Source: Phallusia mammillata (taxonomy: Eukaryota). Taken from it: a DNA stretch of 64,000 nt. The position numbers were made by a program, and so were the translations under genes. Of this stretch, positions 42,899 through 58,805 are shown piece after piece; the first letter of the stretch is position 1; each line of letters begins with the position of its first letter. The stretch spans positions 17,670,001 to 17,734,000 of the forward strand of contig OZ281497.1 of assembly GCA_965637545.1 (NCBI GenBank), read 5' to 3'. The notes beneath the pieces were generated by a model that was not told where the DNA came from, did not search any database, and saw only the letters and a program-made list of their open reading frames with translations.

Positions 42899-45800
42899 TC
42901 AAGGGACAGCTTGAGTCATATGCAAGGGAGTGATCATCTCCTCAAATTTGGTTCCTTTAACGTTGCAACCACGTAAATTGGCTTCAAATAGGTCGCACCC
43001 GGACAAGTCGCAATTCTATGTACAGGAAAAAACGGTTTAGAAAAGCGGAGAATCAATTTAAAGTAGCCATAGCGCTCTGAAATAGATAAATTAATCACAA
43101 CTAAACGAAGACAAATCAATCTTTTCCAGGCCAGCAAGCACGCTAATACCCTCATCGACAGCACCACCTACGGGGGCGGCACACTAGGTAGAAGAAGAGA
43201 TGTATCAGTGAGGTAACGGTAATAGCTATTGGGTCAGCTTGCCCGCCCGGCGCTGAACCCCTTGATGGGATCTCCTGCACCCGGGAAAGGCAGTGTTTCC
43301 ACATGGGTGCCGTTGCACTTACGAGGCTATGCTGGGCAACACACACATCTAAGGGTTTGCCGTCGGTGCATCTGCCTCTGGGTTGTGGTTCTTGTGAACC
43401 TTGCTCGCTACGTTCAATTCCGTCAGGCCGTCGATGGTGGAGGTTCAGAGTTGCGTGCGGGGCCCAAGAATTTTCCCTCTACTTTTTAAGGCCCCGTGAC
43501 CTCGCGGTGCAACACATCAATTCGTTATCGAGTTTCTTCGCGATTCAAAGCTTTTCGTTAGAGCGGTTCGGCAAGTGTCTCAACCCGCTTTTATGGGTAT
43601 TGATTTACACAAGTCGGTTAGGAATGCATCAATTTTTCAGTCAGAAAATGTTAGCCATAAACCTTTTTTAGTGAGATAATTTTAACACAAAAGAAAACTG
43701 TATGAAACTGGCCAAATAGTCAATAAATCGTCTTTGGCTTCTACATCACACCAAAAATAAAACACACTATACTTGTTTCAAAGAAAAAAGTTTAATTGTT
43801 TAGTTAACAGGTCACCTCCAGGTCCGTGCCGGCCAAAATCGCACCACGCAGGTTGCAGTTTTTCAGGTTTGAGTTCTTCACAGTGGCGACTCGCAGATTG
43901 GCGCCTGCCATCAGACTGCCTTCGAAATTCACCCCTTTCATGTTGGCACCTACGGCGAGAAAAAACACAAAACCGCGTAATGAGCGACGCAAACAAATTA
44001 GAAGGCCGACCGAATTTCCGAACATGCATCAGCAACAGAGTGCAATCGCTGATGCGAGCTAGGGTATTACAAGGTGCAAACAGATATGACAATGCTAAAA
44101 ACTGAAAATGAAGTCCTTTCACGAACAATTAGTAGCCTATGCTTAAACTGTTTTGACAATGCACCTATCCTGGCAGAGTTGCCATACTGTCCTTGTTATA
44201 AGAACAGATGTTTGTCCTTATTTTTATGAAATGGTCTTATTTTGACCCTGCACCCTCATAACTTGCTAAATTAATTTGTAAAAAATACAAATATTTTTTG
44301 CTCCTTAACTCCTTTTTTTCTATTTTGGAAGGGAAATCGAAGTCTTTACCGGGCGTCCTTATTTTTTTGCTTCAAAATAATGGCAACCCTGCCTATATGC
44401 TATTTTAGTGTAGGCATATATTGAGGAAAATATTACTGGTATAAAGAAAAACTACTTGCCTTCCATATTTGCCTTTAGACCTGAAGGATCATCAAAGTTG
44501 CATCCCTTCATCGAACAACCCTCAGCATTGCAGCATATCATACGAACACCTTGCAAGTTGGCTCCCTGAAACGTAAACAGCAAAATTGTGTATCATCAAA
44601 CAAACTTTGTTACATGCATTCCATACAAATCTAAACCACGCACAATAAGTAAATGTTATGTAACGAAAAGCGTTAGTTTATACCAGGGCATTGGAAATGT
44701 ACTTAAATAATGGTTTATGGTACGGGCGTGTGGTTTTCGAAGAAAAGTCCGGTTTTATGTAGTTTAGTTTTTTTGTTTTGTTTAAAATGTTGAGAATGTT
44801 TACATTTCGTAAAATACAACATTCTCAAAATTAAATATGTAACTTTACTATGGTTGATCTTGGGTTATCGAGTACAAGGTAACCGAATGCCCGGTTTAAA
44901 CCTTGTTTAAAAAGTTATGCAACACAAGAGTGGGTCCCATGTAATCGTTTAGCCACAAATCTGTTTTTCAATTTCTATGCGACGTTAAACTTTCGACGGG
45001 GGCAAAAATCATGCAGCACTGATTAGCTTAAATTCATTGAGCGCCGTGACGACGAACAGAGATTGTTCAGGCAGATAACAACGCAACACCGTACATCGAG
45101 TATTGATCCGGTGAGGTCGGCCCGTTCCAATGAACAGCAGTACAGGTTGGCTTGAGCAAGGTTGCAGTGACTTAGGTTTGCAAGCTTGAAGTTGATGTAT
45201 CGCAGATCAAGCCGCGATAGATCAGCACCCGAAAAATTGATTCCCTGTGCAGAACAACATTGTAAGCGGTTAAGTTCATGGGCAAAGGTTTCGATGACCC
45301 TAAAGTGAGTTCGTTTCAAACAATTAATAAAAAAAATACGTTTGGCCTTTTGATCTCATACTACCGAAACGGCCTGCTACAAGAAATAAAATATTGTAAC
45401 ATTTTTACTTTTTATTCGGTAGCACCCAAAAATCAAACGCAATATTTCTAGAATTTTGGTAATCTCCGAAAAAATAAGTTTTCTTTTTCTTTCTTAACGG
45501 TTGTAACATATAGATTTAATGATGAAAAATTCTTCGTCGCAGTTGCATAATCTGTCCCAAGATCTGATTACAATCCACTGACGCAGAAATAAGTATGTAG
45601 CGCCCACCAGCGGATTTAGGTTTTACCAATTTAACGCCAAATGTTTTCAACCAAAAGGCGCCCACTTGGTTGTAGTCAAGTTTATTTTTGGTGAAAGAAC
45701 ACATGGCGACACAACTATACGGAACAACCACCAAGCCGGAAATAGCTGCGCAAGGTTAAAACGTTATATAGTGGATGAAATAATTGGTGTTTCATGACTA

Positions 45801-48494
45801 AACGCGGCAGCTCCACCTTATTATGAAGTGGCGAGAGCTCACAGATTAATTGAATTTGGTGCAGTGCAAGTAAAACATGACTGGGGAGAAAACGGTTTTC
45901 GGACAGTCATGTGCAGACCCTAGGAAACATCACACATATAAAACTTCAAAAAACAAACCTGAAATCGTAGTTCACATTTTGCAGGAGTAACTAGGAGTGC
46001 TTTAACCACCATACATCGAGTTAAAGGTTCCTCATAATTTTCTTTTTTTCTTTCCTGTAATAAGGAATAATGTTGTAATCTGTAACTTCATAATGGAAAC
46101 TCACTAGGGGTATCAAACTTTTTCAAGGCCCAAGATAAAACTCAAAGTAACTTGTTTTTACAGTAACATGACAACAAAAGTAATGCACCATAAATTTCTA
46201 AATTGTGCATTTCATTCTTACCATTAACTACATTAAGAACTATAAAGAAATTAATACAATATAGCAAACGTGAATAAACCAGTTGTACTATATATAACTT
46301 TAAAAACTAATCATGTAACAATCTCAAGAGATAATTCTCACCATTACAATCCATAAAAAAGTTCCATTAATTTCTTCCTATTACTAAGAAGCGATGTTTC
46401 ATGCTAACTCGCTGGTCAACACATGTTTCGGCCTCGAGTAAAACACATAGTTTGTAATTTACAAATCCTTCATGGGTCACACAAAATCACCACATTATTG
46501 ATGCACCCCTCCACCAACCACAACTTGCAAAACTATGATTTGACTAACACATGCAATTCACTACAAGGGACTTATATCCAATGGCACTTTCAAACTTTTT
46601 AGTTTTGTCAAAAACTATTTTTGGGGCTAGCTAGGGTCACTTGGGCTATCAAGTCAAGCTAAACATTCAATTTACTAGGTTTTCCAGCTATGAAAGTTTA
46701 AATGCCAAATGTAACTATTCTACATCATGCCATTGCAAGATATTTTTGCCCAAAATGCACTTATGTTTCATTAAAGTTAATAGTAAAAAGAAAGACAACG
46801 CCTTAACACTGAAGGACCAATGTCAAAATTAGGAAAAAACTTACTAACCCGTATAATATTCTGGACTTGTTTGGCCACAGTCATCATGCCAAAAAAGTTC
46901 GCTTCCTCCAAAACTCCTGTGTACAAGTAACAAACTGATGGGGTTTACAATACCAATACCCTCAATTCACTGTTTTAACTATTTTTTTGAATGTTTGGTT
47001 AAGGTAAAAGTAGGAACAACTGTCTTAAATACATTAACTAGCTCAATGTTGACAATTGTGAAACCTTAAGTGGCCAATTAAACAACCTTTCCATACCTCT
47101 GGGGTCAATTGAAGGTTCAATAATCATTTTGCCATGTCTTAGATAGCCGAGAATGGGTTCAAAGTATTTTGGACATCGATCAAGCAACACGTTCCCATTT
47201 CCATCCACAGTATTTCTCCATTGCTCTGCATGTTTAAAAGGTTGTCTTAACTTCAAAATAATGGTATTGTATGTGTTACTTTATACAAGGACATGTTTAA
47301 TCACATGGTATAACACAGTTTGTCTGTCACTAGCAGATATTTTTGTTACTTGTTTCTTTTTACAATTGTTAAACAGGTTAAACTTGAACAAAACTAAATT
47401 TATAAAATCAAACTGCTGTATTGCAGTAAACCAGGTTTTCTAGGCTTACTATGTCAAGTTAATTTTTAAAAGATGCAACATTTTGTTTAATATATACAGA
47501 ACATATCTTTATTGTAAAAACACAGAGCTACAATAGCTACAAACCAAACAAATACATACTTGAATCTTGAAACATCTTGGCAAGCATGCTGTTTGTTTCC
47601 CTGCCAATCAAAGTACTCCTGAAAAAAGTGTAAACAGTACATTACCTTTGACAGCTTTTAAGATAAGGGAAATCATTAATGAATATATTTTTTGAACAAA
47701 CCTGGTTGTTGAAAATATTGTTCCACCAACATTTAGATTTATCCAATCATTTGGACAATTTGCACTCCACTGGGAATTTTTCTTTTCTTCCATTTTCTCC
47801 AACAAACACAAGTAAAGCACTTCATCATTTCTTGGTAAAATATCCATGTAAAGCTTAGAGTTTGACACCAACAAATCAAACAAACAAATATATACTTACT
47901 GGATCAAATTAACATCACACATTTCAGCACCACTTTTTGTTTGTAACTTGATGTGTGTGTCTTCATCAAGTGAAAAGGCAACTCTTAGAGCTTGTACCAG
48001 TTCTTCTGTAGTTTCAGGCAGACAAAGGACCTGTCAAACAAATATCATTATTTTACATTTTGATGACCTCTACACCTGGAAATCAATGCATAACTAGCAT
48101 ATTTATAAGGAAATCTGTAAAATCTAAACCCACTCAATTTGGTAATGTTAACACTGCCTGTTAATCTAATCTATACATGTAAGTATAACATGTGTAATGA
48201 TACTATTTAAAAAAATGGATTTGTTGTGCTTGAGTCAAATGAATCCAGCAGATAAAACACCAAATTAAGCAGCAATCAAAAAAGCAGTAAAATAGACACT
48301 ACAGTCAATTTGACACATTAAATCTAACAAACTTTGTATCATAAACAGTAGAGTACTTATCAAACTTATCTGGGCTTGGTTGAAAGAAACAAAAATGGAG
48401 ATCAAATCACAGTGAAACAATAACTTACTTTTCCGACACTAGAAGAAGCACCTTCTTGCAAAAATACTTGCACTCGCCTTGGGTTAGCTGCCAT
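42899..48494 (-). CDS. KCTD9: BTB/POZ and pentapeptide-repeat protein KCTD9 (11 exons: 48494-48429, 48030-47900, 47830-47702, 47618-47560, 47225-47097, 46916-46849, 46054-45959, 45244-45095, 44565-44460, 43949-43816, 43015-42899; 394 aa)
   Basis: MAANPRRVQVFL N-terminus; BTB motifs WINLNVGGTIFSTTRSTL and LLDRCPKYFEPILGYLRHG; pentapeptide repeats GINFSGADLSRLDLRYINFKLANL; C-terminus TKFEEMITPLHMTQAVP*. All match vertebrate KCTD9. Exon phases sum to 1185 nt. Confidence 0.95.
44174..44391. mobile_element. Degenerate hAT-like MITE in a KCTD9 intron
   Basis: Ends CAGAGTTGCCA ... TGGCAACCCTG form an 11-bp terminal inverted repeat with 1 mismatch; no clean target-site duplication found. Confidence 0.45.
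46105..46510. mobile_element. Possible degenerate hAT-like MITE in a KCTD9 intron
   Basis: TAGGGGTATCAAACTTTT ... TTGATGCACCCCT imperfect inverted ends of the Charlie-like type; no TSD seen. Confidence 0.3.
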
Positions 48495-52204: not shown

Positions 52205-52521
52205 TGCTGAGTACAAAAAGTTTTTGGAAACCAGCTTTGTATATATCAAAGGAGTAAGAACTGCCCAAAAAAAATAACATATGCCATTCCTAAGGCCATG
52301 TACTGCAGAATGCAGATGCTGTCAGTGCCACTGCCATTAGACTTGTGTTACTGCTTGTGAACAAATTTTGTCAAAAATAATCCAGGGAACCATGACGATT
52401 GGCAAAAAATAGACAAACATTTTTGGTGCACAAGTCACACATTTTTATCAATGCTACATCATGTGTTTTTCTTTAGCAACATTACTGACTGTAGCTGCAA
52501 CAAAAAATAACTACCACTGAC

Positions 52522-53025
52522 TAGGGTTCCTCTATTTCCCGGATTTTTTCATTCCCGGGAATCGGGAAATAATTTTTTCATTTCCCGGGAATTCCCGGGA
52601 TTCCCGACCGAAAAAGTGCCTATTTTTTCGTGAATAATTACGTCATTGTAACTGCTAAAATTAGTTTATTTTTACTAGGGGCATCTAATTAGTCATGATT
52701 TTGTCGTTTAAAACTATATTTGCAAGCTTCTTTAACGTTAACAAGATTAGAAAATTACGAAAAATAAATTCGTTATTTCTAGTACCGCTAGGTAGCGCAT
52801 TTTCGCGAAAATAGTTTACCACCTCGTATAAAAACGTTTACTTACTTTGTGATTAAAATTACAAAACGCCATATTTTGGTAACAGTTAGCAGAAATTTGA
52901 ACATTTACGTTATTATTTCACAAAATTAACACGTTTTTGCTTAATTGTCTGTTTCCCGGGAATTCAAAACAAATTTCCCGGGATTCGGGAACGTAACTTT
53001 GCCGGGAAATCCCGGGAATTTCCCG
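52522..53025. mobile_element. Truncated hAT-like MITE with TTCCCGGGA subterminal repeats
   Basis: Starts TAGGGTTCC. Clusters of TTCCCGGGA occur at about 52537-52606 and 52953-53025. The expected right TIR (GGAACCCTA) is absent; the element ends at the edge of the palindrome. Confidence 0.6.
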
Positions 53026-53034
53026 TCGAGACAT

Positions 53035-55748
53035 ACCGAACCTGAACCCATATGACAAGCGGTTCGACTCCCTGGTTAAAACACGTCAAACTGTGCGAAA
53101 GTATTCCAAGCCATGCACTGGCGATTTGTACCGAGCGGTTTAATAACATGTACTAGGTCGTTGTTTACATCTCTGGATGAACTCCGAACTCATTTTACCA
53201 GACTGGTAGTGAACAGAACATATTCTGCGGTTGCAAAGACCTTTGCTCTATTTATCGCTAGAAATAAATCCAAATAGCGTGTCAAAGCTTACCTCAAAAT
53301 GTCATTTTTACATTGGTGGTTTTACCACATCCATACATTACAATTTACAAAGAAGTACATGCAGAGTCGCACATTTCGCGGGAGCATGTGCATCGTTATT
53401 TGTAAGTGCAACACTTCTTACTGGAAATTGCGGTGGGCATATTAAAAACATTTACGAATAGTGTCAAGCTAAGTAATGTTAAAGAAAGCCATGAACTTCT
53501 GTCGTATGTTATTGTGTTTATAGCAGCAAGCAACATATATCTCAAAAATTCACCATCATCATTTCGCCGAAATGGTAAGTGCGAAAAATTCGAAAATTGT
53601 TAATAAGCGTTACGCACCACTGCGTACAGTTTCCAAAAAAAAATTTTCATTTTTATTTTTTTTAAGCCATAGAGAGTGGTCAAGGTACGTACAAATCGAC
53701 ATTTTGAGGTATGGGAGAAAACGTTTCAGCTTATAAAGTCACATTTCTGGTCTCAAACAGTATTTTCCAATAAAATGTCTTTAACCGTTTACATAAGTCG
53801 CCCATATACAAATGCATACACAGTACATAGTCCAATGTTACGAAAGAAATAAAAAGACATTCCGAGCCTAATATTTTTCTATAAATTGGGACAGATGTAC
53901 GTTAGAGCAAGAAGTTTCACCTCGTAGAGTCACATTTCTGGTCTCAAACAGTATTTGCCAACGATATGACTTTAACCGATACTTGTTTACGTAGGTCGCA
54001 CATATACAAATGCATACATCGCTACGCCAATGTTACGATCAAATAAAAAGACATTCCGAGCCTAATATTTTTCTATAAATTGGCACAGATGTACGTTAGA
54101 GCAAGAAGTTTCACCTGATAGAGTCACATTTCTGGTCTCAAACAGTATTTGCCAACGAAATGACTTCAACCGATACTTGTTTACGTAGGTCGCACATATA
54201 CAAATGCATACATCGCTAAGCCAATGTTACGATCAAATAAAAAGACATTCCGAGCCTAATATTTTTCTATAAATTGGCACAGATGTACGTTAGAGCAAGA
54301 AGTTTCAGTTTGTAAAGTCACATTTCTGGTCTCAAACAGTATTTGCCAACGAAATGACTTCAACCGATACTTGTTTACGTAGGTCGCACATATACAAATG
54401 CATACATCGCTAAGCCAATGTTACGAAAGAAATAAAAAGACTATCCGAGCCTAATATTTTTCTATAAATTGGCACAGATGTACGTTAGAGCAAGAAGTTT
54501 CACCTCGTAGAGTCACATTTCTGGTCTCAAACAGTATGTCTTTTTATTTATTTCGTAACATTGGCTTACCGATGTATGCATTTGTATATGTGCGACCTAC
54601 GTAAACAAGTATCGGTTAAAGTCATTTCGTTGGCAAATACTGTTTGAGACCAGAAATGTGACTCTACGAGGTGAAACTTCTTGCTCTAACGTACATCTGT
54701 GCCAATTTATAGAAAAATATTAGGCTCGGATAGTATTTTTATTTCTTTCGTAACATTGGCGTAGCGATGTATGCATTTGTTTATGTGCGACCTATACGTA
54801 AACAAGTATCGGTTAAAGTCATTTCGTTGGCAAATACTGTTTGAGACCAGAAATGTGACTCTACGAGGTGAAACTTCTTGCTCTAACGTACATCTGTGCC
54901 AATTTATAGAAAAAATTTAGGCTCGGAATGTCTTTTTATTTGATCGTAACATTGGATTAGCGATGCATGCATTTGTATATGGGCGACTTATGTAAACAAG
55001 TATCGGTTAAAGTCATTTCATTGGCAAATACTGTTTGAAACAAGAAATGTGACTTTACAAGCTGAAACGTTTTCTCTCATACCTCAAAATGTCGATTTGT
55101 ACGTACCTTGACCACTCTCTATGGTTTAAAAAAAATAAAAATGAAAAACAAATTTTGGAAACTGTACGCAGTGGTGCGTAACGCTTATTAACAATTTTCG
55201 CACTTACCATTTCGGCGAAATGATGATGGTGAATTTTTGAGATATATGCTGCTTGCTGCTATAAACACAATAACATACGACAGAAGTTCATGGCTTTCTT
55301 TAACATTACTTAGCTTGACACTATTCGTAAATGTTTTTAATATGCCCACCGCAATTTCCAGTAAGAAGTGTTGCACTTACAAATAACGATGCACATGCTC
55401 CCGCGAAATGTGCGACTCTGCATGTACTTCTTTGTAAATTGTAATGTATGGATGTGGTAAAACCAACCAATGTAAAAATGACATTTTGAGGTAAGCTTTG
55501 ACACGCTATTTGGATTTATTTCTAGCGATAAATAGAGCAAAGGTCTTTGCAACCGCAGAATATGTTCTGTTCACTACCAGTCTGGTAAAATGAGTTCGGA
55601 GTTCATCCAGAGATGTAAACAACGACCTAGTACATGTTATTAAACCGCTCGGTACAAATCGCCAGTGCATGGCTTGGAATACTTTCGCACAGTTTGACGT
55701 GTTTTAACCAGGGAGTCGAACCGCTTGTCATATGGGTTCAGGTTCGGT
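53035..55748. repeat. Spacer-less long inverted repeat (palindrome); left arm 53035-about 54536, right arm about 54537-55748
   Basis: 53035-53736 is the reverse complement of about 55055-55748 with a few differences; the ORF track shows mirrored ORFs 53406..53603+ / 55188..55376- and 53231..53461+ / 55337..55552-. The inner parts are opposed tandem arrays meeting at about 54537. Confidence 0.95.
53737..55054. repeat. Tandem repeat of about 194 bp, about 4.1 copies on + then about 2.7 copies on -
   Basis: Unit marker AGTCACATTTCTGG starts at 53737, 53928, 54122, 54316 and 54511. The reverse-complement marker AGAAATGTGACT ends at 54663, 54860 and 55054. Confidence 0.95.
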
Positions 55749-56203
55749 TCGGGTTCACTTCGTTTTGTTTTTAAGGGTTCGGGTTCGGTTTAGGTTTTTA
55801 AAAATGTACATTTTCGGGTTCGGGTTTTGTTCCGGTTTGGGCAAATTATCCGGTCCAAACCGGTTTGCGGTTTTTGAACCGGTTCAAATTTTCGTTCGTT
55901 TCGATTTAATTCTACCCATCATCTACTTGGCCTTATCAAACCCCAAACTAATTTTGACCGTGCATTGTTATTTTTGACACGCCCTATAAGTGTCGCATAT
56001 TTTTCAGTGCGCTGTTTTGAATAAAAATCACAAAATATAAAACGGGCTGCATTTTTTACTGGTTCGGGACCAACGCCAAACAAAAAATAGGGTTCAACTC
56101 CGGTTCGGGTGTTTAGAAAATCGTAATTAGCGGTTCGGGTTTAATGAAATTAACCGCTCAAACCGGTTCGCGGGTTCGGGTTCAGTTCCGGTTCGACTCC
56201 CTG
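55709..56203. mobile_element. Complete hAT-type MITE (495 bp)
   Basis: Perfect 14-bp TIRs CAGGGAGTCGAACC / GGTTCGACTCCCTG; perfect 8-bp TSD GTTTTAAC at 55701-55708 and 56204-56211; GGTTCGG subterminal repeats; no coding capacity. Confidence 0.92.
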
Positions 56204-56759
56204 GTTTTAACTGCTGGTTACCGGACAGGCGGACACTAAACATTAAAGAAGAAAATTTGAAAAAATACTTTTCCGATTTTTGTACGTTACGTCCTAATCA
56301 AAACGCATTTCAGTTAAAATACCTTTTTCCCCTACGCTTTTTTGCTGTTCTGTTTATTTCTTTACAGATGGCGGTTTTTGCTGCCAAACGTTGTACCAAA
56401 GAATGTGTTTTTCTGTGTTCTTTGGTTTAAGCCGCCCTCAATTCAATCCACGTTAGGTTCTTCAGCAGCAGGTTAAGCTACTAGACGCTAAAATTCCGGG
56501 CATAAAAAGTGTTTTTGAATATTATTTCCGAACACAGATTTTACGTCAAAATTCCGGTCATGTCCGGGAACATCCGGACGCCTGGTAAGTGGTAACTGGT
56601 AACCCTTATCCACGTCAAATTTTGTACTTGATGTTAATTACTTTAAGGTGAGTTATACGAAAGACCGGACTGACAAGGATTTCTGTCGATCATAAGACAA
56701 TTGGGTTTAGCTTTATCTGTCCTTGTTTACAGAACTTGCATGCGGCCCGACACTGTGTT

Positions 56760-56765
56760 TTTATT
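56760..56765 (-). terminator. Candidate polyadenylation signal of MAK16
   Basis: TTTATT on the + strand (AATAAA on -), about 100 nt after the MAK16 stop. Confidence 0.5.
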
Positions 56766-56863: not shown

Positions 56864-58805
56864 TCAATGTTTCAACTTAGTCCTGTGACTCGATGTCGAT
56901 TCCATTTCATATTCAATTTCAACTGCTGGTCGCTTGCGTTTGATCGTTTTAACCTCTGGCTCTTCTTCCTCGGACGATTCCTCATCAGATACATTATTGG
57001 CAATGTCCTATTTTACAAAGAGCGCAATGCATGTTAAGAAAAAACTGAAAATAAAATTCCACAGAAAAAACTACAAGTGAAAGTTTGCAGCTATCTCTTT
57101 TTATGCATAAGAAATGAATGTGAGAAAAAAAATCTTAACTAGTTAAAACTGTTGTTAATACTTTTACACACCACATTACACAAACAACATATTCCCAACA
57201 AGATTTGAAACATGATATTGTTAGCATACCTCTATGTCACTGGTGTCTGATTCATCAAAATCCTCTGCAGCCACATACTGGATGTCAGGCTGAAAATAAA
57301 AAAATGCTTTGGATATATTGTACCACTATGTTACAGTAAACACCACACAAATGTTCATGGTTTACTTCAGAATCAACTTCATCCTCCTTTTCATATTCAA
57401 CATCACTGTCAGACTCAACCTCTTCCTGTTCGAGTGCTCGATCAAAGGCAGTGGCAGGAAAATTGTAGATATCACCGTAGGTTCCTTGTTTTAACCTTTC
57501 CAATAACTCCTTTTCAATCGCTGTATCAAGTTGTGCAGCCACAAGTGCTTTTTGCTGCAATATACAACAGATGAGCAGGAGTGTTTGGAAAAATTTAAAA
57601 TTAAACCCCAAAAAACATTTCATAACTGTCAAGGTGTACAGTACATATGCTTTACTCCCTAAAATTCCCACACAAACAATATAGGCTTTAATAGCATAAG
57701 GATCATAATATTTATGATCAAATAATTTCAATTACATAGAGCTCTTCTGGCAATTTAGTTGATATTATGCCTGGCAGCAACAGCTTATAGATCAAGTACT
57801 TTGTTGGGGCTAAATGTATTCGAAGTAATATATTTTATTGCCTTACATCTGATAAGTCTGTTGTAATTAGAAAATATTTAAATACCAAACCAATAAACAA
57901 TTTACCTCCCGTTTTGCTTCTCTTCTTTCCACTTTCTGATTAATTGGTACAAGTTTTTTTCTATAGAAATATTTTCAGTATAGTTTAACAAAAAAGGTTT
58001 GTTGACAATCATTCACACAACTCACTGTCGTTTTAGTGTAAGCTTTCTTATTCGAATCAGATATTGGTATATTTTTGTGTATCGCTGCTTGCACTTGTGG
58101 CGTAAAAAATAAGGCCAATAAACAAGGTTCTCGTCAATCTGTTCCAAAGCCTTTTCATAGTTTCGAGACAGTTTTACTTTTTCCCACATGCGTGCAGGAA
58201 AAGCTGCTCGCTCAATAGTTTTCATGTACAAATAACAAATACCTGATAAAAAAGTGTACATGTTAACTTTATAGTTGATACTACTTATTTGTTTTAACAG
58301 CAATTCTACCTTTTTCTTCTCGAATTGTGGCATACTGGCTGTTGGATAATGGACATGAATTTCTGTTGCAAAGTCCTGTTACATTGTTTTCATTCTTACA
58401 AAACCGCTGTGTCTTTGATGTGCGAGCTCTAATGACAAAACAGACAACATATAAAATATATGATAAGGTTATCAATAACTAAAGATACATTTTAAATAAA
58501 CTTACTTTACTTTATAGGAACAATATTCAGTGTTTCCAATGACATCCCACAGGACCTAAAAAGAAACAAAGCATTTGTTATCATTTTAAGGATCACTTTT
58601 TAAACCAAATTTACTTCACAAATACAATTCAATGCCCAAAAAAGTACAAAGGTGGATTGGATACATAGAGATAGAAACGTATTGCGGTATTTGATAATGC
58701 TTAATGTGCTGAACGTTAATGAACCCCAATACACAATTGCGGGGTGCGAAAACAGTTATTTAAGCTTTACAGTACATATTAATTACTTACGTCGTCATGC
58801 TGCAT
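56864..58805 (-). CDS. MAK16: Ribosome biogenesis protein MAK16 (exons 58805-58791, 58555-58506, 58428-58310, 58242-58026, 57960-57906, 57554-57366, 57289-57230, 57007-56864; 282 aa)
   Basis: MQHDD/VLWDVIG...[60 protein letters not shown]...[15 protein letters not shown], acidic tail and [11 protein letters not shown] motif. GT-AG junctions in phase; 849 nt. Confidence 0.97.

What the first reader, a model, noticed from the sequence alone, without database searches (positions are those of the whole stretch)
53035..55748. A 2.7-kb spacer-less palindrome between MAK16 and CACUL1
Seen: arms of about 1.5 and 1.2 kb meet with no spacer at about 54537 (AAACAGT-AT-GTCTTTT, 2-nt overlap). The roughly 700-bp unique outer parts differ at several sites: a 1-nt indel at about 53321, A/G at about 53533, a 9-nt duplication at about 53582-53599, an altered A-tract at about 53637 and a substitution at about 53666. 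These differences argue against a simple foldback read artefact. Established: such palindromes extrude cruciforms, are recombinogenic, and give long dsRNA when transcribed. Inference: MAK16 read-through or the CACUL1 pre-mRNA would fold into a hairpin over 1 kb long, a substrate for Dicer or ADAR. It resembles modular Foldback elements but lacks its own TSD.
Basis: partly seen in the sequence, partly recalled or inferred. Interest (0 to 1): 0.75.

Follow-up and report, generated by a model that had tools for sequence, protein, structure and literature searches.

The report
Foldback transposon with inverted-duplicated flank
The 2.7-kb palindrome is one copy of a common hairpin-shaped jumping element of this sea-squirt genome, and 517 bases of its right-hand neighbouring DNA were later copied, inverted, onto its left side, most likely during repair of a broken chromosome; it is a clear but ordinary example of a known kind of rearrangement.

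Summary
It has two layers.

**Core (53552-55230, 1679 bp).** This is one copy of a multi-copy, non-coding foldback transposon family.
- Each end is a conserved terminus of about 165 nt, followed by inverted arrays of a 194-nt repeat.
- The spacer-less centre junction is identical in three other copies.
- At least 110 candidate termini occur in the genome.
- Four of four complete copies elsewhere have perfect 8-bp target-site duplications.

**Outer layer (517 nt per side, 99.6% identical).** This layer is specific to this locus.
- It consists of 469 nt found nowhere else in the genome, an 8-bp duplication and the first 40 bp of a hAT-type MITE. That MITE is intact on the right side only.
- The left copy ends inside a second hAT-type MITE that has lost its last 18 bp.
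- The foldback copy has no target-site duplication here.

**Best reading.** A break occurred left of the element. Its arms snapped back and primed synthesis into the right flank. The new strand was then end-joined to the other broken end.

**Support and limits.**
- Short-read contigs from three independent studies show the unique part at 1.6-2.0 times the depth of the single-copy flank.
- No contig bridges the new junction.
- Eight other copies show no such flank duplication.
- MAK16 is confirmed; CACUL1 is not.
- Hairpin RNA is untested.

The scan had not found this on other DNA.

The parts
52522..53034 (+). MITE 'A' (hAT-type: TAGGGTTCC...GGAACCCTA ends, 8-bp target duplications in other copies). 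Here it is truncated and lacks its last 18 bp.
   Evidence: over 40 copies at 82-98% identity; eight full copies continue with TCCCGGGAAGGAACCCTA beyond the point where the window copy stops; six show clean 8-bp duplications.
53034..53035 (.). Novel junction: the broken MITE A joined to position 40 of the inverted MITE B. No microhomology at the joint.
   Evidence: Not bridged by any listed read contig.
53035..53082 (-). Inverted copy of the first 40 bp of MITE B (53035-53074) plus B's 8-bp target duplication (53075-53082).
   Evidence: positions 1-48 match hundreds of B ends. One search gives the B terminus and its duplication.
53083..53551 (-). U': inverted duplicate of the unique right flank.
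   Evidence: only two copies in the 240-Mb genome, both here; two differences from the right copy.
53552..53722 (+). Left terminal unit of the foldback transposon (starts ACCATCATCATTTCGCC). It carries a private 9-nt insertion at 53582-53590.
53723..54537 (+). Left array, 4.2 copies of the 194-nt unit.
54537..54538 (.). Spacer-less centre junction (CAGTAT|GTCTTTTTATTT), inherited by the family.
   Evidence: the same junction occurs in L003, L009 and L012/L028.
54538..55068 (-). Right array, 2.7 copies of the unit, inverted.
55069..55230 (-). Right terminal unit of the foldback transposon. It is 99-100% identical to a 696-bp copy on C1.
55231..55700 (+). U: the original unique right flank. Its first 8 nt (GAATTTTT) are the presumed surviving half of the transposon's target duplication.
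55701..56206 (+). Intact MITE 'B' (hAT-type: CAGGGAGTCGAACCG ends; body 55709-56198) with the 8-bp duplication GTTTTAAC on both sides. The palindrome edge at 55748 lies 40 bp inside it.
56866..58475 (-). MAK16 exons (neighbouring gene; its 3' end points towards the palindrome).
   Evidence: Pfam Ribosomal_L28e and Mak16 C-terminal region; last exon, stop codon and poly(A) signal.

Best explanation
The object has two layers of different age.

(1) A non-autonomous foldback (FB-like) DNA transposon of 1679 bp (53552-55230) inserted next to unique DNA that was already followed by the hAT-type MITE B.

(2) Later a double-strand break occurred to the left of the element, or at its left end. After 5' resection, the left arm of the element annealed to its own right arm within one strand. 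Any non-matching 3' tail was trimmed back to the paired part. The 3' end was then extended outward along the right flank for 517 nt, through the unique DNA, B's target duplication and 40 bp of B. The new strand was released and joined without microhomology to the other broken end, which had been eroded into MITE A.

The result is the loss of the transposon's left target duplication and of everything between MITE A and the element. That DNA is replaced by an inverted copy of the right flank.

Shown: the anatomy, the copy numbers, the truncation of A, the intact B, the missing duplication and the sharp step in arm identity. Inferred: the break, the snap-back priming and the end-joining.

No function is indicated. 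The locus is best seen as a young, probably neutral, structural scar that could form a long hairpin if transcribed.
For: Family status of the core:
- The terminus and the 194-nt unit recur genome-wide, often as inverted pairs.
- Four of four complete copies elsewhere have perfect 8-bp duplications and unrelated flanks.
- The centre junction is identical in three other copies.

The outer layer is specific to this locus:
- U has exactly two copies in the genome.
- The window copy has no duplication, and its flanks are inverted copies of each other.
- None of eight other copies shows an inverted flank copy: four by direct flank comparison and four by genome search with the flank.

Direction of copying was right to left:
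- B is intact with both duplications on the right; only its first 40 bp are on the left.
- MITE A is cut 18 bp short of its end.

A younger outer layer:
- There are 2 differences in 547 aligned nt outside 53582, against about 14 events in the next 249 nt (Fisher p = 4e-6).
- The left arm keeps its private 9-nt insertion at 53582-53590. So new synthesis began at the left terminus or within 38 nt of it.

Read support: in three DNA studies one contig covers 53053-53580, at 1.71, 1.60 and 2.03 times the depth of the single-copy flank contig.

Mechanistic precedent:
- Foldback priming at breaks near inverted repeats, with flap trimming and fill-in synthesis, is shown in yeast (PMC10622511) and proposed for human inverted duplications (PMC3907307).
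- Snap-back synthesis followed by end joining is described in Drosophila (PMC5728401).
Against: - No read contig bridges the new junction 53034|53035. The 40-bp MITE end there has roughly a thousand copies, so short-read graphs break at it.
- The depth ratio rests on one single-copy contig per run and could be distorted by heterozygosity.
- Classical foldback priming gives hairpin-capped ends and dicentric chromosomes. An interstitial 517-nt product needs the extra step of strand release and capture of the second end.
- The ancestral allele (full MITE A, intervening DNA, left target duplication) was not seen.
- Contigs in two runs join 53084 directly to 53552, skipping U. The assembly has no such joint. 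This is unexplained.
Confidence: 0.6

Rival explanations
1. Replication-based origin. A fork stalled at the hairpin-prone element, and the nascent strand switched template between the inverted arms (a 'U-turn'). It copied 517 nt of the flank in reverse and then switched again to resume at MITE A.
For: It gives the same product as the break model: an inverted flank copy that starts at the boundary of a pre-existing inverted repeat. Template exchange at nearby inverted repeats is an established route to palindromic chromosomes (my own knowledge; reviewed in PMC7999016).
Against: The second junction 53034|53035 has no microhomology, which template-switch models normally need. The event also deleted DNA and cut a MITE, as expected of eroded broken ends.
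Confidence: 0.18
2. Assembly artefact. The left 517 nt (or the junction with MITE A) was created by a chimeric or foldback long read, or by a wrong path through the repeat graph. The genome has only one copy of U.
For: No listed contig bridges 53034|53035. Hairpin-forming elements are known sources of chimeric long reads (my own knowledge). The two differences between the U copies could be two alleles.
Against: - U is at 1.6-2.0 times single-copy depth in three independent studies.
- The structure lies inside a chromosome-scale contig.
- The false join would need read support between two points without homology.
- The arms differ by about 6% and in repeat number inside the element, unlike a read folded on itself.
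Confidence: 0.08
3. Aberrant ('alternative') transposition. The transposase acted on ends from sister chromatids or on one end only, producing a flanking inverted duplication plus a deletion, as described for Ac/Ds.
For: Alternative transposition of Ac/Ds yields inverted duplications and deletions next to the element (bioRxiv 10.1101/2020.01.07.897926). The family looks recently active: the right terminus is 100% identical over 100 nt to another copy.
Against: In such events the new junction lies between a transposon terminus and a new target and carries a target duplication. Here both termini abut the same sequence symmetrically, and the only novel joint (MITE A to MITE B position 40) involves no foldback terminus.
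Confidence: 0.05
4. The whole 2.7 kb is itself a mobile Foldback element with 1.2-1.5-kb inverted ends.
For: Known foldback elements such as Tetris have long unique outer domains, up to 866 bp, outside their tandem repeats (PMC4079207).
Against: - The outer 469 nt occur nowhere else.
- The outer edge falls 40 bp inside an otherwise intact MITE on one side and inside a broken MITE on the other.
- There is no target duplication.
- The family's real termini lie at 53552 and 55230.
Confidence: 0.02
5. Functional reading: the palindrome is transcribed (MAK16 read-through or the left neighbour's pre-mRNA) and acts as a hairpin-RNA source for Dicer or ADAR. This would be independent of how it arose.
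For: The strand folds into a near-continuous hairpin with 1176 pairs across the centre and a 283-bp perfect helix. Mu killer is a precedent: a transposon-derived inverted duplication proposed to be read through from a flanking gene (PMC3440606).
Against: - MAK16 has its own poly(A) signal about 1 kb away.
- The one run guessed to be RNA gives only a 162-nt contig at depth 5.5 in U and nothing over 53280-53760.
- No small-RNA data were available.
- The Rfam hit at the centre is far below threshold, 85 against 195 bits.
Confidence: 0.1

Closest known systems
Tetris, foldback transposon of Drosophila virilis (PMC4079207)
   Same: Both are non-coding. Both have long inverted arms built from an outer domain plus a variable number of ~200-nt tandem repeats (220 nt in Tetris, 194 nt here). 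Both have 8-10-bp target duplications. In both, the internal repeat also occurs as long one-directional satellite-like arrays (here on C5 at 16.94-16.99 Mb).
   Different: There is no sequence relationship. Here the outer terminal domain is short (~165 nt) and most copies have no middle domain, only a fixed spacer-less centre. The host is an ascidian.
Drosophila FB and Galileo (P superfamily) foldback-type elements (PMC3573991, PMC4168063)
   Same: Internally repetitive long inverted ends, structural dynamism and non-autonomous copies.
   Different: FB makes 9-bp and Galileo 7-bp duplications (my own knowledge); this family makes 8-bp ones. No transposase was found in the pieces available, so the superfamily is unknown.
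Foldback-primed inverted duplications (foldback inversions) after double-strand breaks (PMC10622511, PMC3907307)
   Same: An inverted duplication starts at the edge of a pre-existing inverted repeat that serves as the snap-back primer. There is a 'spacer' between the copies and loss of DNA on the broken side.
   Different: Those products are chromosome-scale (hairpin-capped end, dicentric, terminal deletion). Here synthesis stopped after 517 nt and the end was rejoined locally, leaving an interstitial scar. The priming repeat is a transposon.
Synthesis-dependent end joining with snap-back synthesis (PMC5728401, PMC2943611)
   Same: Intrastrand secondary structure at a broken end primes synthesis before the end is joined to the other side.
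   Different: The tracts described there are a few nucleotides long and create microhomology. Here the tract is 517 nt and the joint has none.
Mu killer of maize (PMC3440606)
   Same: A natural inverted duplication that includes a transposon end and forms a long hairpin if read through from a neighbouring gene.
   Different: Mu killer duplicates transposase sequence and silences its family. Here the duplicated part is unique flanking DNA, and no expression is shown.

Membership tests
Foldback-type (FB-like) DNA transposons (structural class) | Long inverted arms that make up most or all of the element | tested here: met
   Arms 53552-54537 and 54538-55230 with no middle domain.
Foldback-type (FB-like) DNA transposons (structural class) | Arms built of tandem sub-repeats, variable in number | tested here: met
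   The 194-nt unit has 4.2 and 2.7 copies here and from under 1 to more than 10 in other copies.
Foldback-type (FB-like) DNA transposons (structural class) | Many dispersed copies with the same termini | tested here: met
   110-114 candidate termini, with the 40 scored at 88-100% identity. Aligned ends all start ACCATCATCATTTCGCC.
Foldback-type (FB-like) DNA transposons (structural class) | Target-site duplication flanking each insertion | tested here: met
   Perfect 8-bp duplications in 4 of 4 complete copies elsewhere. NOT met by the window copy, whose left flank was replaced.
Foldback-type (FB-like) DNA transposons (structural class) | A transposase-encoding autonomous partner | tested here: inconclusive
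   No long reading frame was found in the internal parts of larger copies that could be read. The one domain hit is a GDSL-lipase-like frame, probably a nested element. Further genome letters could not be fetched.
Drosophila FB / Mutator-related foldback elements | 9-10-bp target duplication | tested here: not met
   The duplication is 8 bp in 4 of 4 copies; lengths of 7, 9 and 10 bp fail.
hAT or P superfamily (8-bp duplication) | 8-bp duplication together with superfamily-typical termini or transposase | tested here: inconclusive
   The 8-bp duplication is met. The terminus ACCATCATC is not the YAGRG type seen in neighbouring MITEs A and B. No transposase was linked.
Foldback-primed inverted duplication | The duplication begins at the boundary of a pre-existing inverted repeat | tested here: met
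   The high-identity tract runs from 53035 to 53581, ending within 30 nt of the transposon terminus at 53552. The step in identity has p = 4e-6.
Foldback-primed inverted duplication | Loss of DNA on the broken side and a non-homologous distal joint | tested here: met
   MITE A lacks 18 bp and the left target duplication is absent. The joint has 0 nt of microhomology. The size of the deletion is unknown.
Foldback-primed inverted duplication | Both copies physically present in real molecules | tested here: inconclusive
   U is at 1.6-2.0 times single-copy depth in three studies, but no contig crosses 53034|53035.
Hairpin-RNA / endogenous siRNA locus | Transcription across both arms and small RNAs from both | not tested
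   No small-RNA data were available. One possible RNA run shows almost nothing here. The reads tools were at their caps.

The most novel reading that the evidence does not exclude
Snap-back priming from the arms of a foldback transposon may be a general way in which such elements copy neighbouring DNA into both ends. It would then be the origin of the long unique 'flanking domains' of Tetris- and Galileo-type inverted ends. This locus would be a snapshot of the first step: flank captured symmetrically, not yet mobile.
Probability: 0.08. Interest if true: 0.6.

Novelty: new member of a known kind. Interest (0 to 1): 0.3.

Why it matters
The locus turns a puzzling 'palindrome without target duplication' into two ordinary, separable events. 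It also gives a nucleotide-level natural example of a transposon's own inverted arms priming an inverted duplication of host DNA in a germ line.

It documents a foldback family with a satellite-forming 194-nt unit in an ascidian. The searchable literature returned nothing on foldback elements in this animal group.

For annotation, the start-codon-plus-splice-donor motif at 55200-55217, read elsewhere in the scan as a first exon, is part of the transposon terminus and is present in every copy.

Tried and rejected
The survey of target duplications therefore rests on four complete copies. The flank test rests on eight copies: four by direct flank comparison and four by genome search with the flank.
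- I looked for a transposase inside larger copies and found none. The only hit was a GDSL-lipase-like frame, probably a nested element.
- I tried to confirm CACUL1. All five searches were blank: Pfam on four minus-strand frames, the atlas, the word-based homologue search, a Cullin (PF00888) scan of the whole genome, and PDB sequences.
- I tried to confirm the new junction through two reading frames that cross it. Neither is on record.
- Insertion of the element into the centre of an older palindrome is rejected. The flanking 8-mers are reverse complements of each other, not a direct duplication.
- A de novo centre is rejected, because the same junction occurs in other copies.
- An unusually mutated left arm is rejected. 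Both arms fall within the family's range of distance from the consensus.
- The Rfam MIR8007 match is rejected as a generic long-hairpin hit far below threshold.
Full report
**Observation**

The repeat finder shows inverted arms from 53035 to 55748. The outer pairs 53035-53323/55460-55748 and 53317-53587/55195-55465 are 99-100% complementary. A mesh of 85-98% pairs lies further in.

Tandem Repeats Finder shows why the inner part is a mesh. It is built from a 194-197-nt unit, with 4.2 copies at 53723-54537 and 2.7 inverted copies at 54541-55068. The arrays abut at 54537|54538.

- a T indel at 53317;
- A/G at 53533;
- a 9-nt insertion at 53582-53590;
- a changed A/T run at 53639-53643;
- G/A at 53666.

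The observation therefore stands.

**What the parts are**

I searched the window's own genome with each part. The genome is 240 Mb, and the window is C4:17670001-17734000.

- *The 194-nt unit and the ~170 nt outside it.* These recur at many loci, often as inverted pairs a few hundred bases to about 8 kb apart. The terminal 100-170 nt has 110-114 candidate places, and the 40 scored are 88-100% identical.
- *The family's termini.* Aligned ends place the terminus at window 53552 on the left and 55230 on the right. All ends start ACCATCATCATTTCGCC.
- *Complete copies elsewhere.* Four copies could be read at both ends. All four have perfect 8-bp target-site duplications (GTGACGAC, AGAAAAAC, CACATGTA, GAAAAAAC). 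Their flanks are unrelated, with 23-33% ungapped identity when one flank is inverted.
- *The centre junction.* The window's junction (CAGTAT|GTCTTTTTATTT) is letter for letter the same in three other copies. A second centre type is shared by three further copies. The spacer-less centre is therefore inherited with the element and was not made at this locus.
- *Coding capacity.* No reading frame of note lies in the element. The internal parts of larger copies that I could read showed no transposase.

The core, 53552-55230 (1679 bp), is thus one copy of a non-autonomous foldback-type transposon family.

**The outer 517 nt per arm is a different matter**

- Positions 53083-53551 and their mirror 55231-55700 occur exactly twice in the genome, both times here.
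- The outermost 48 nt match hundreds of places. On the right they continue without a break into a repeat of about 500 bp.
- Aligning nine copies of that repeat shows a hAT-type MITE (B) with ends CAGGGAGTCGAACCG and 8-bp duplications. In the window its body is 55709-56198, with GTTTTAAC on both sides.
- The palindrome's right edge (55748) is therefore an arbitrary point 40 bp inside an intact MITE.
- On the left only those 40 bp and the 8-bp duplication are present, inverted (53035-53082).
- To the left of 53035 lies another repeat. Eight other copies of it continue for 18 more bases to a TAGGGTTCC/GGAACCCTA inverted end. Six of them show clean 8-bp duplications.
- The window copy of this MITE (A, 52522-53034) is cut short. 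It is joined to MITE B position 40 without microhomology.

**Order and direction of events**

MITE B is whole on the right and partial on the left. MITE A is truncated. The foldback copy has lost its target duplication: its two flanking 8-mers are reverse complements of each other, not a direct repeat. So the left 517 nt was copied from the right flank. It replaced whatever lay between MITE A and the element.

The two layers differ in age. There are 2 differences in the 547 aligned nt from 53035 to 53581. There are about 14 events in the next 249 nt. Fisher's exact test gives p = 4e-6.

The left arm keeps a private 9-nt insertion at 53582-53590 that no other copy has. So the newly made tract began at the left terminus or no more than 38 nt inside it. 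Both arms lie within the family's normal range of distance from the consensus. The right terminus is 100% identical over 100 nt to a 696-bp copy on C1, which suggests that the family was active recently.

**Mechanism**

The product is what foldback (snap-back) priming predicts:
1. A break occurs to the left of the element.
2. Resection exposes a single strand.
3. The two arms anneal within that strand.
4. The non-matching tail is trimmed.
5. The 3' end is extended outward along the right flank.

These steps are shown experimentally for breaks near natural inverted repeats in yeast (PMC10622511). The same mechanism is proposed for human inverted duplications, which carry a spacer between the copies (PMC3907307).

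Here synthesis ended after 517 nt and the end was joined locally to the other broken end. That resembles synthesis-dependent end joining after snap-back synthesis (PMC5728401), but with a far longer tract.

A replication template switch at the hairpin would give the same product. I rank it lower because the distal joint lacks microhomology. Aberrant transposition does not fit, since the only novel joint involves no foldback terminus.

These steps are inference. The anatomy is what is shown.

**Is it real DNA?**

I laid Logan contigs of four runs on 52300-53760 (1461 letters).
- In three DNA runs from three studies a single contig covers 53053-53580. That is exactly the block of words containing at least one base of U.
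- Its word depth is 729 against 426, 16.6 against 10.4 and 37.8 against 18.6 for the single-copy contig at 52300-52547. The ratios are 1.71, 1.60 and 2.03, as expected for two copies.
- Two runs carry the right-arm letters at 53316 and 53533. One run carries the left-arm letters.
- No listed contig bridges 53034|53035. The adjoining MITE end is far too abundant for a short-read graph.
- Two reading frames across the joint are not on record in public assemblies.

I therefore keep an 8% chance of an assembly artefact.

One thing remains unexplained. Contigs in two runs join 53084 directly to 53552, skipping U, with a shorter side of only 22 letters. The assembly has no such joint. The likeliest cause is a polymorphic insertion of the family next to another copy of MITE B, but I could not test that.

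**Is it recurrent?**

Of eight other copies, none has an inverted copy of its flank. Four were compared directly at both flanks. For four more I searched the genome with the 400 nt next to the terminus. The flank duplication is a one-off at this locus.

MAK16 is confirmed on the minus strand, by Pfam Ribosomal_L28e and Mak16 C-terminal hits. Its last coding exon ends near 56866, and a poly(A) signal lies near 56765, about 1 kb from the palindrome.

The gene on the left could not be identified as CACUL1. Pfam, the atlas, the homologue search, a Cullin scan of the whole genome and PDB sequences were all blank. I did not build a joined exon model.

As one strand the 2714 nt fold at -2116 kcal/mol, against about -620 to -640 for shuffles, with a 283-bp uninterrupted helix. 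A transcript would therefore be a long hairpin, but transcription is not shown. The one run guessed to be RNA has a 162-nt contig at depth 5.5 inside U and nothing over 53280-53760. The Rfam hit at the centre (MIR8007, 85 bits against a threshold of 195) is a generic hairpin match.

**Comparison with known elements, and verdict**

The closest described element is Tetris of Drosophila virilis. It is a non-coding foldback element with ~220-nt internal repeats, 8-10-bp duplications and satellite arrays of the same repeat (PMC4079207). The family here behaves alike, including long one-directional arrays on C5, but it is unrelated in sequence. Full-text searches found no paper on foldback elements in ascidians or tunicates.

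That the genome is a sea squirt's comes from earlier notes of this scan. I did not check it.

Verdict: this is a new member of known kinds. It is a foldback transposon copy plus a foldback-primed inverted duplication of its flank. It is of modest interest, chiefly as a clean natural example and as a caution for annotation.

Noticed in passing
G000 C5:16944747-16947081 and C5:16978385-16990575 (loci L022-L027, L033, L038, L040): The 194-nt unit of the foldback family also forms long one-directional, satellite-like arrays (2.3 kb, and about 12 kb with small interruptions) without terminal units. Tetris repeats do the same in Drosophila virilis.
   Followed up: partly
window 53084|53552 (equivalently 55230|55699): Contigs of two independent DNA runs (X3, X5) join the end of MITE B directly to the foldback terminus, skipping the 467 nt of U. 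Their depth is near single-copy. Run X2 and the assembly have no such joint. This may be a polymorphic insertion next to another B copy, or another allele of this locus.
   Followed up: partly
window 53566-53582 and 55200-55217: Every copy of the foldback terminus carries GCCGAAATG|GTAAGTGCG, a start codon followed by a consensus 5' splice site. Another first-stage note read this stretch as a duplicated promoter and first exon. It is transposon sequence, though each insertion could in principle offer a cryptic donor site.
   Followed up: partly
window 55709-56198 (and 53035-53074): MITE B (hAT-type, 8-bp duplications that are often GTTTTAAC-like) has ends resembling a tRNA T-arm (GGTTCGACTCC). 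From word depth its copy number is on the order of a thousand.
   Followed up: partly
window 52522-53034: MITE A family (hAT-type, about 531 bp when complete, full of TTCCCGGGAA motifs). A 581-nt contig of this family stands at depth 315 in the run guessed to be RNA, so some copy may be transcribed.
   Followed up: no
L039:2600-3040 (G000 C3:18450609-18451049), inside an 8.2-kb foldback copy: A 146-aa frame with a weak GDSL-lipase match (E = 2.5e-6, below Pfam's cut-off) lies in the middle of a large copy. It is probably a nested retroelement with an esterase domain, not the family's transposase.
   Followed up: no
window 43804-47883, minus strand: Exons with pentapeptide repeats (Pfam E = 1.9e-13). 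By eye there is also a BTB-like exon, which Pfam did not match. This suggests a KCTD9-like gene.
   Followed up: no
L011 flank, G000 C5:3357984-3358383: The 400 nt left of this foldback copy recur at 97% identity in direct orientation at C5:3323576 and C5:3372689. This looks like a local segmental repeat of 15-35 kb spacing.
   Followed up: no
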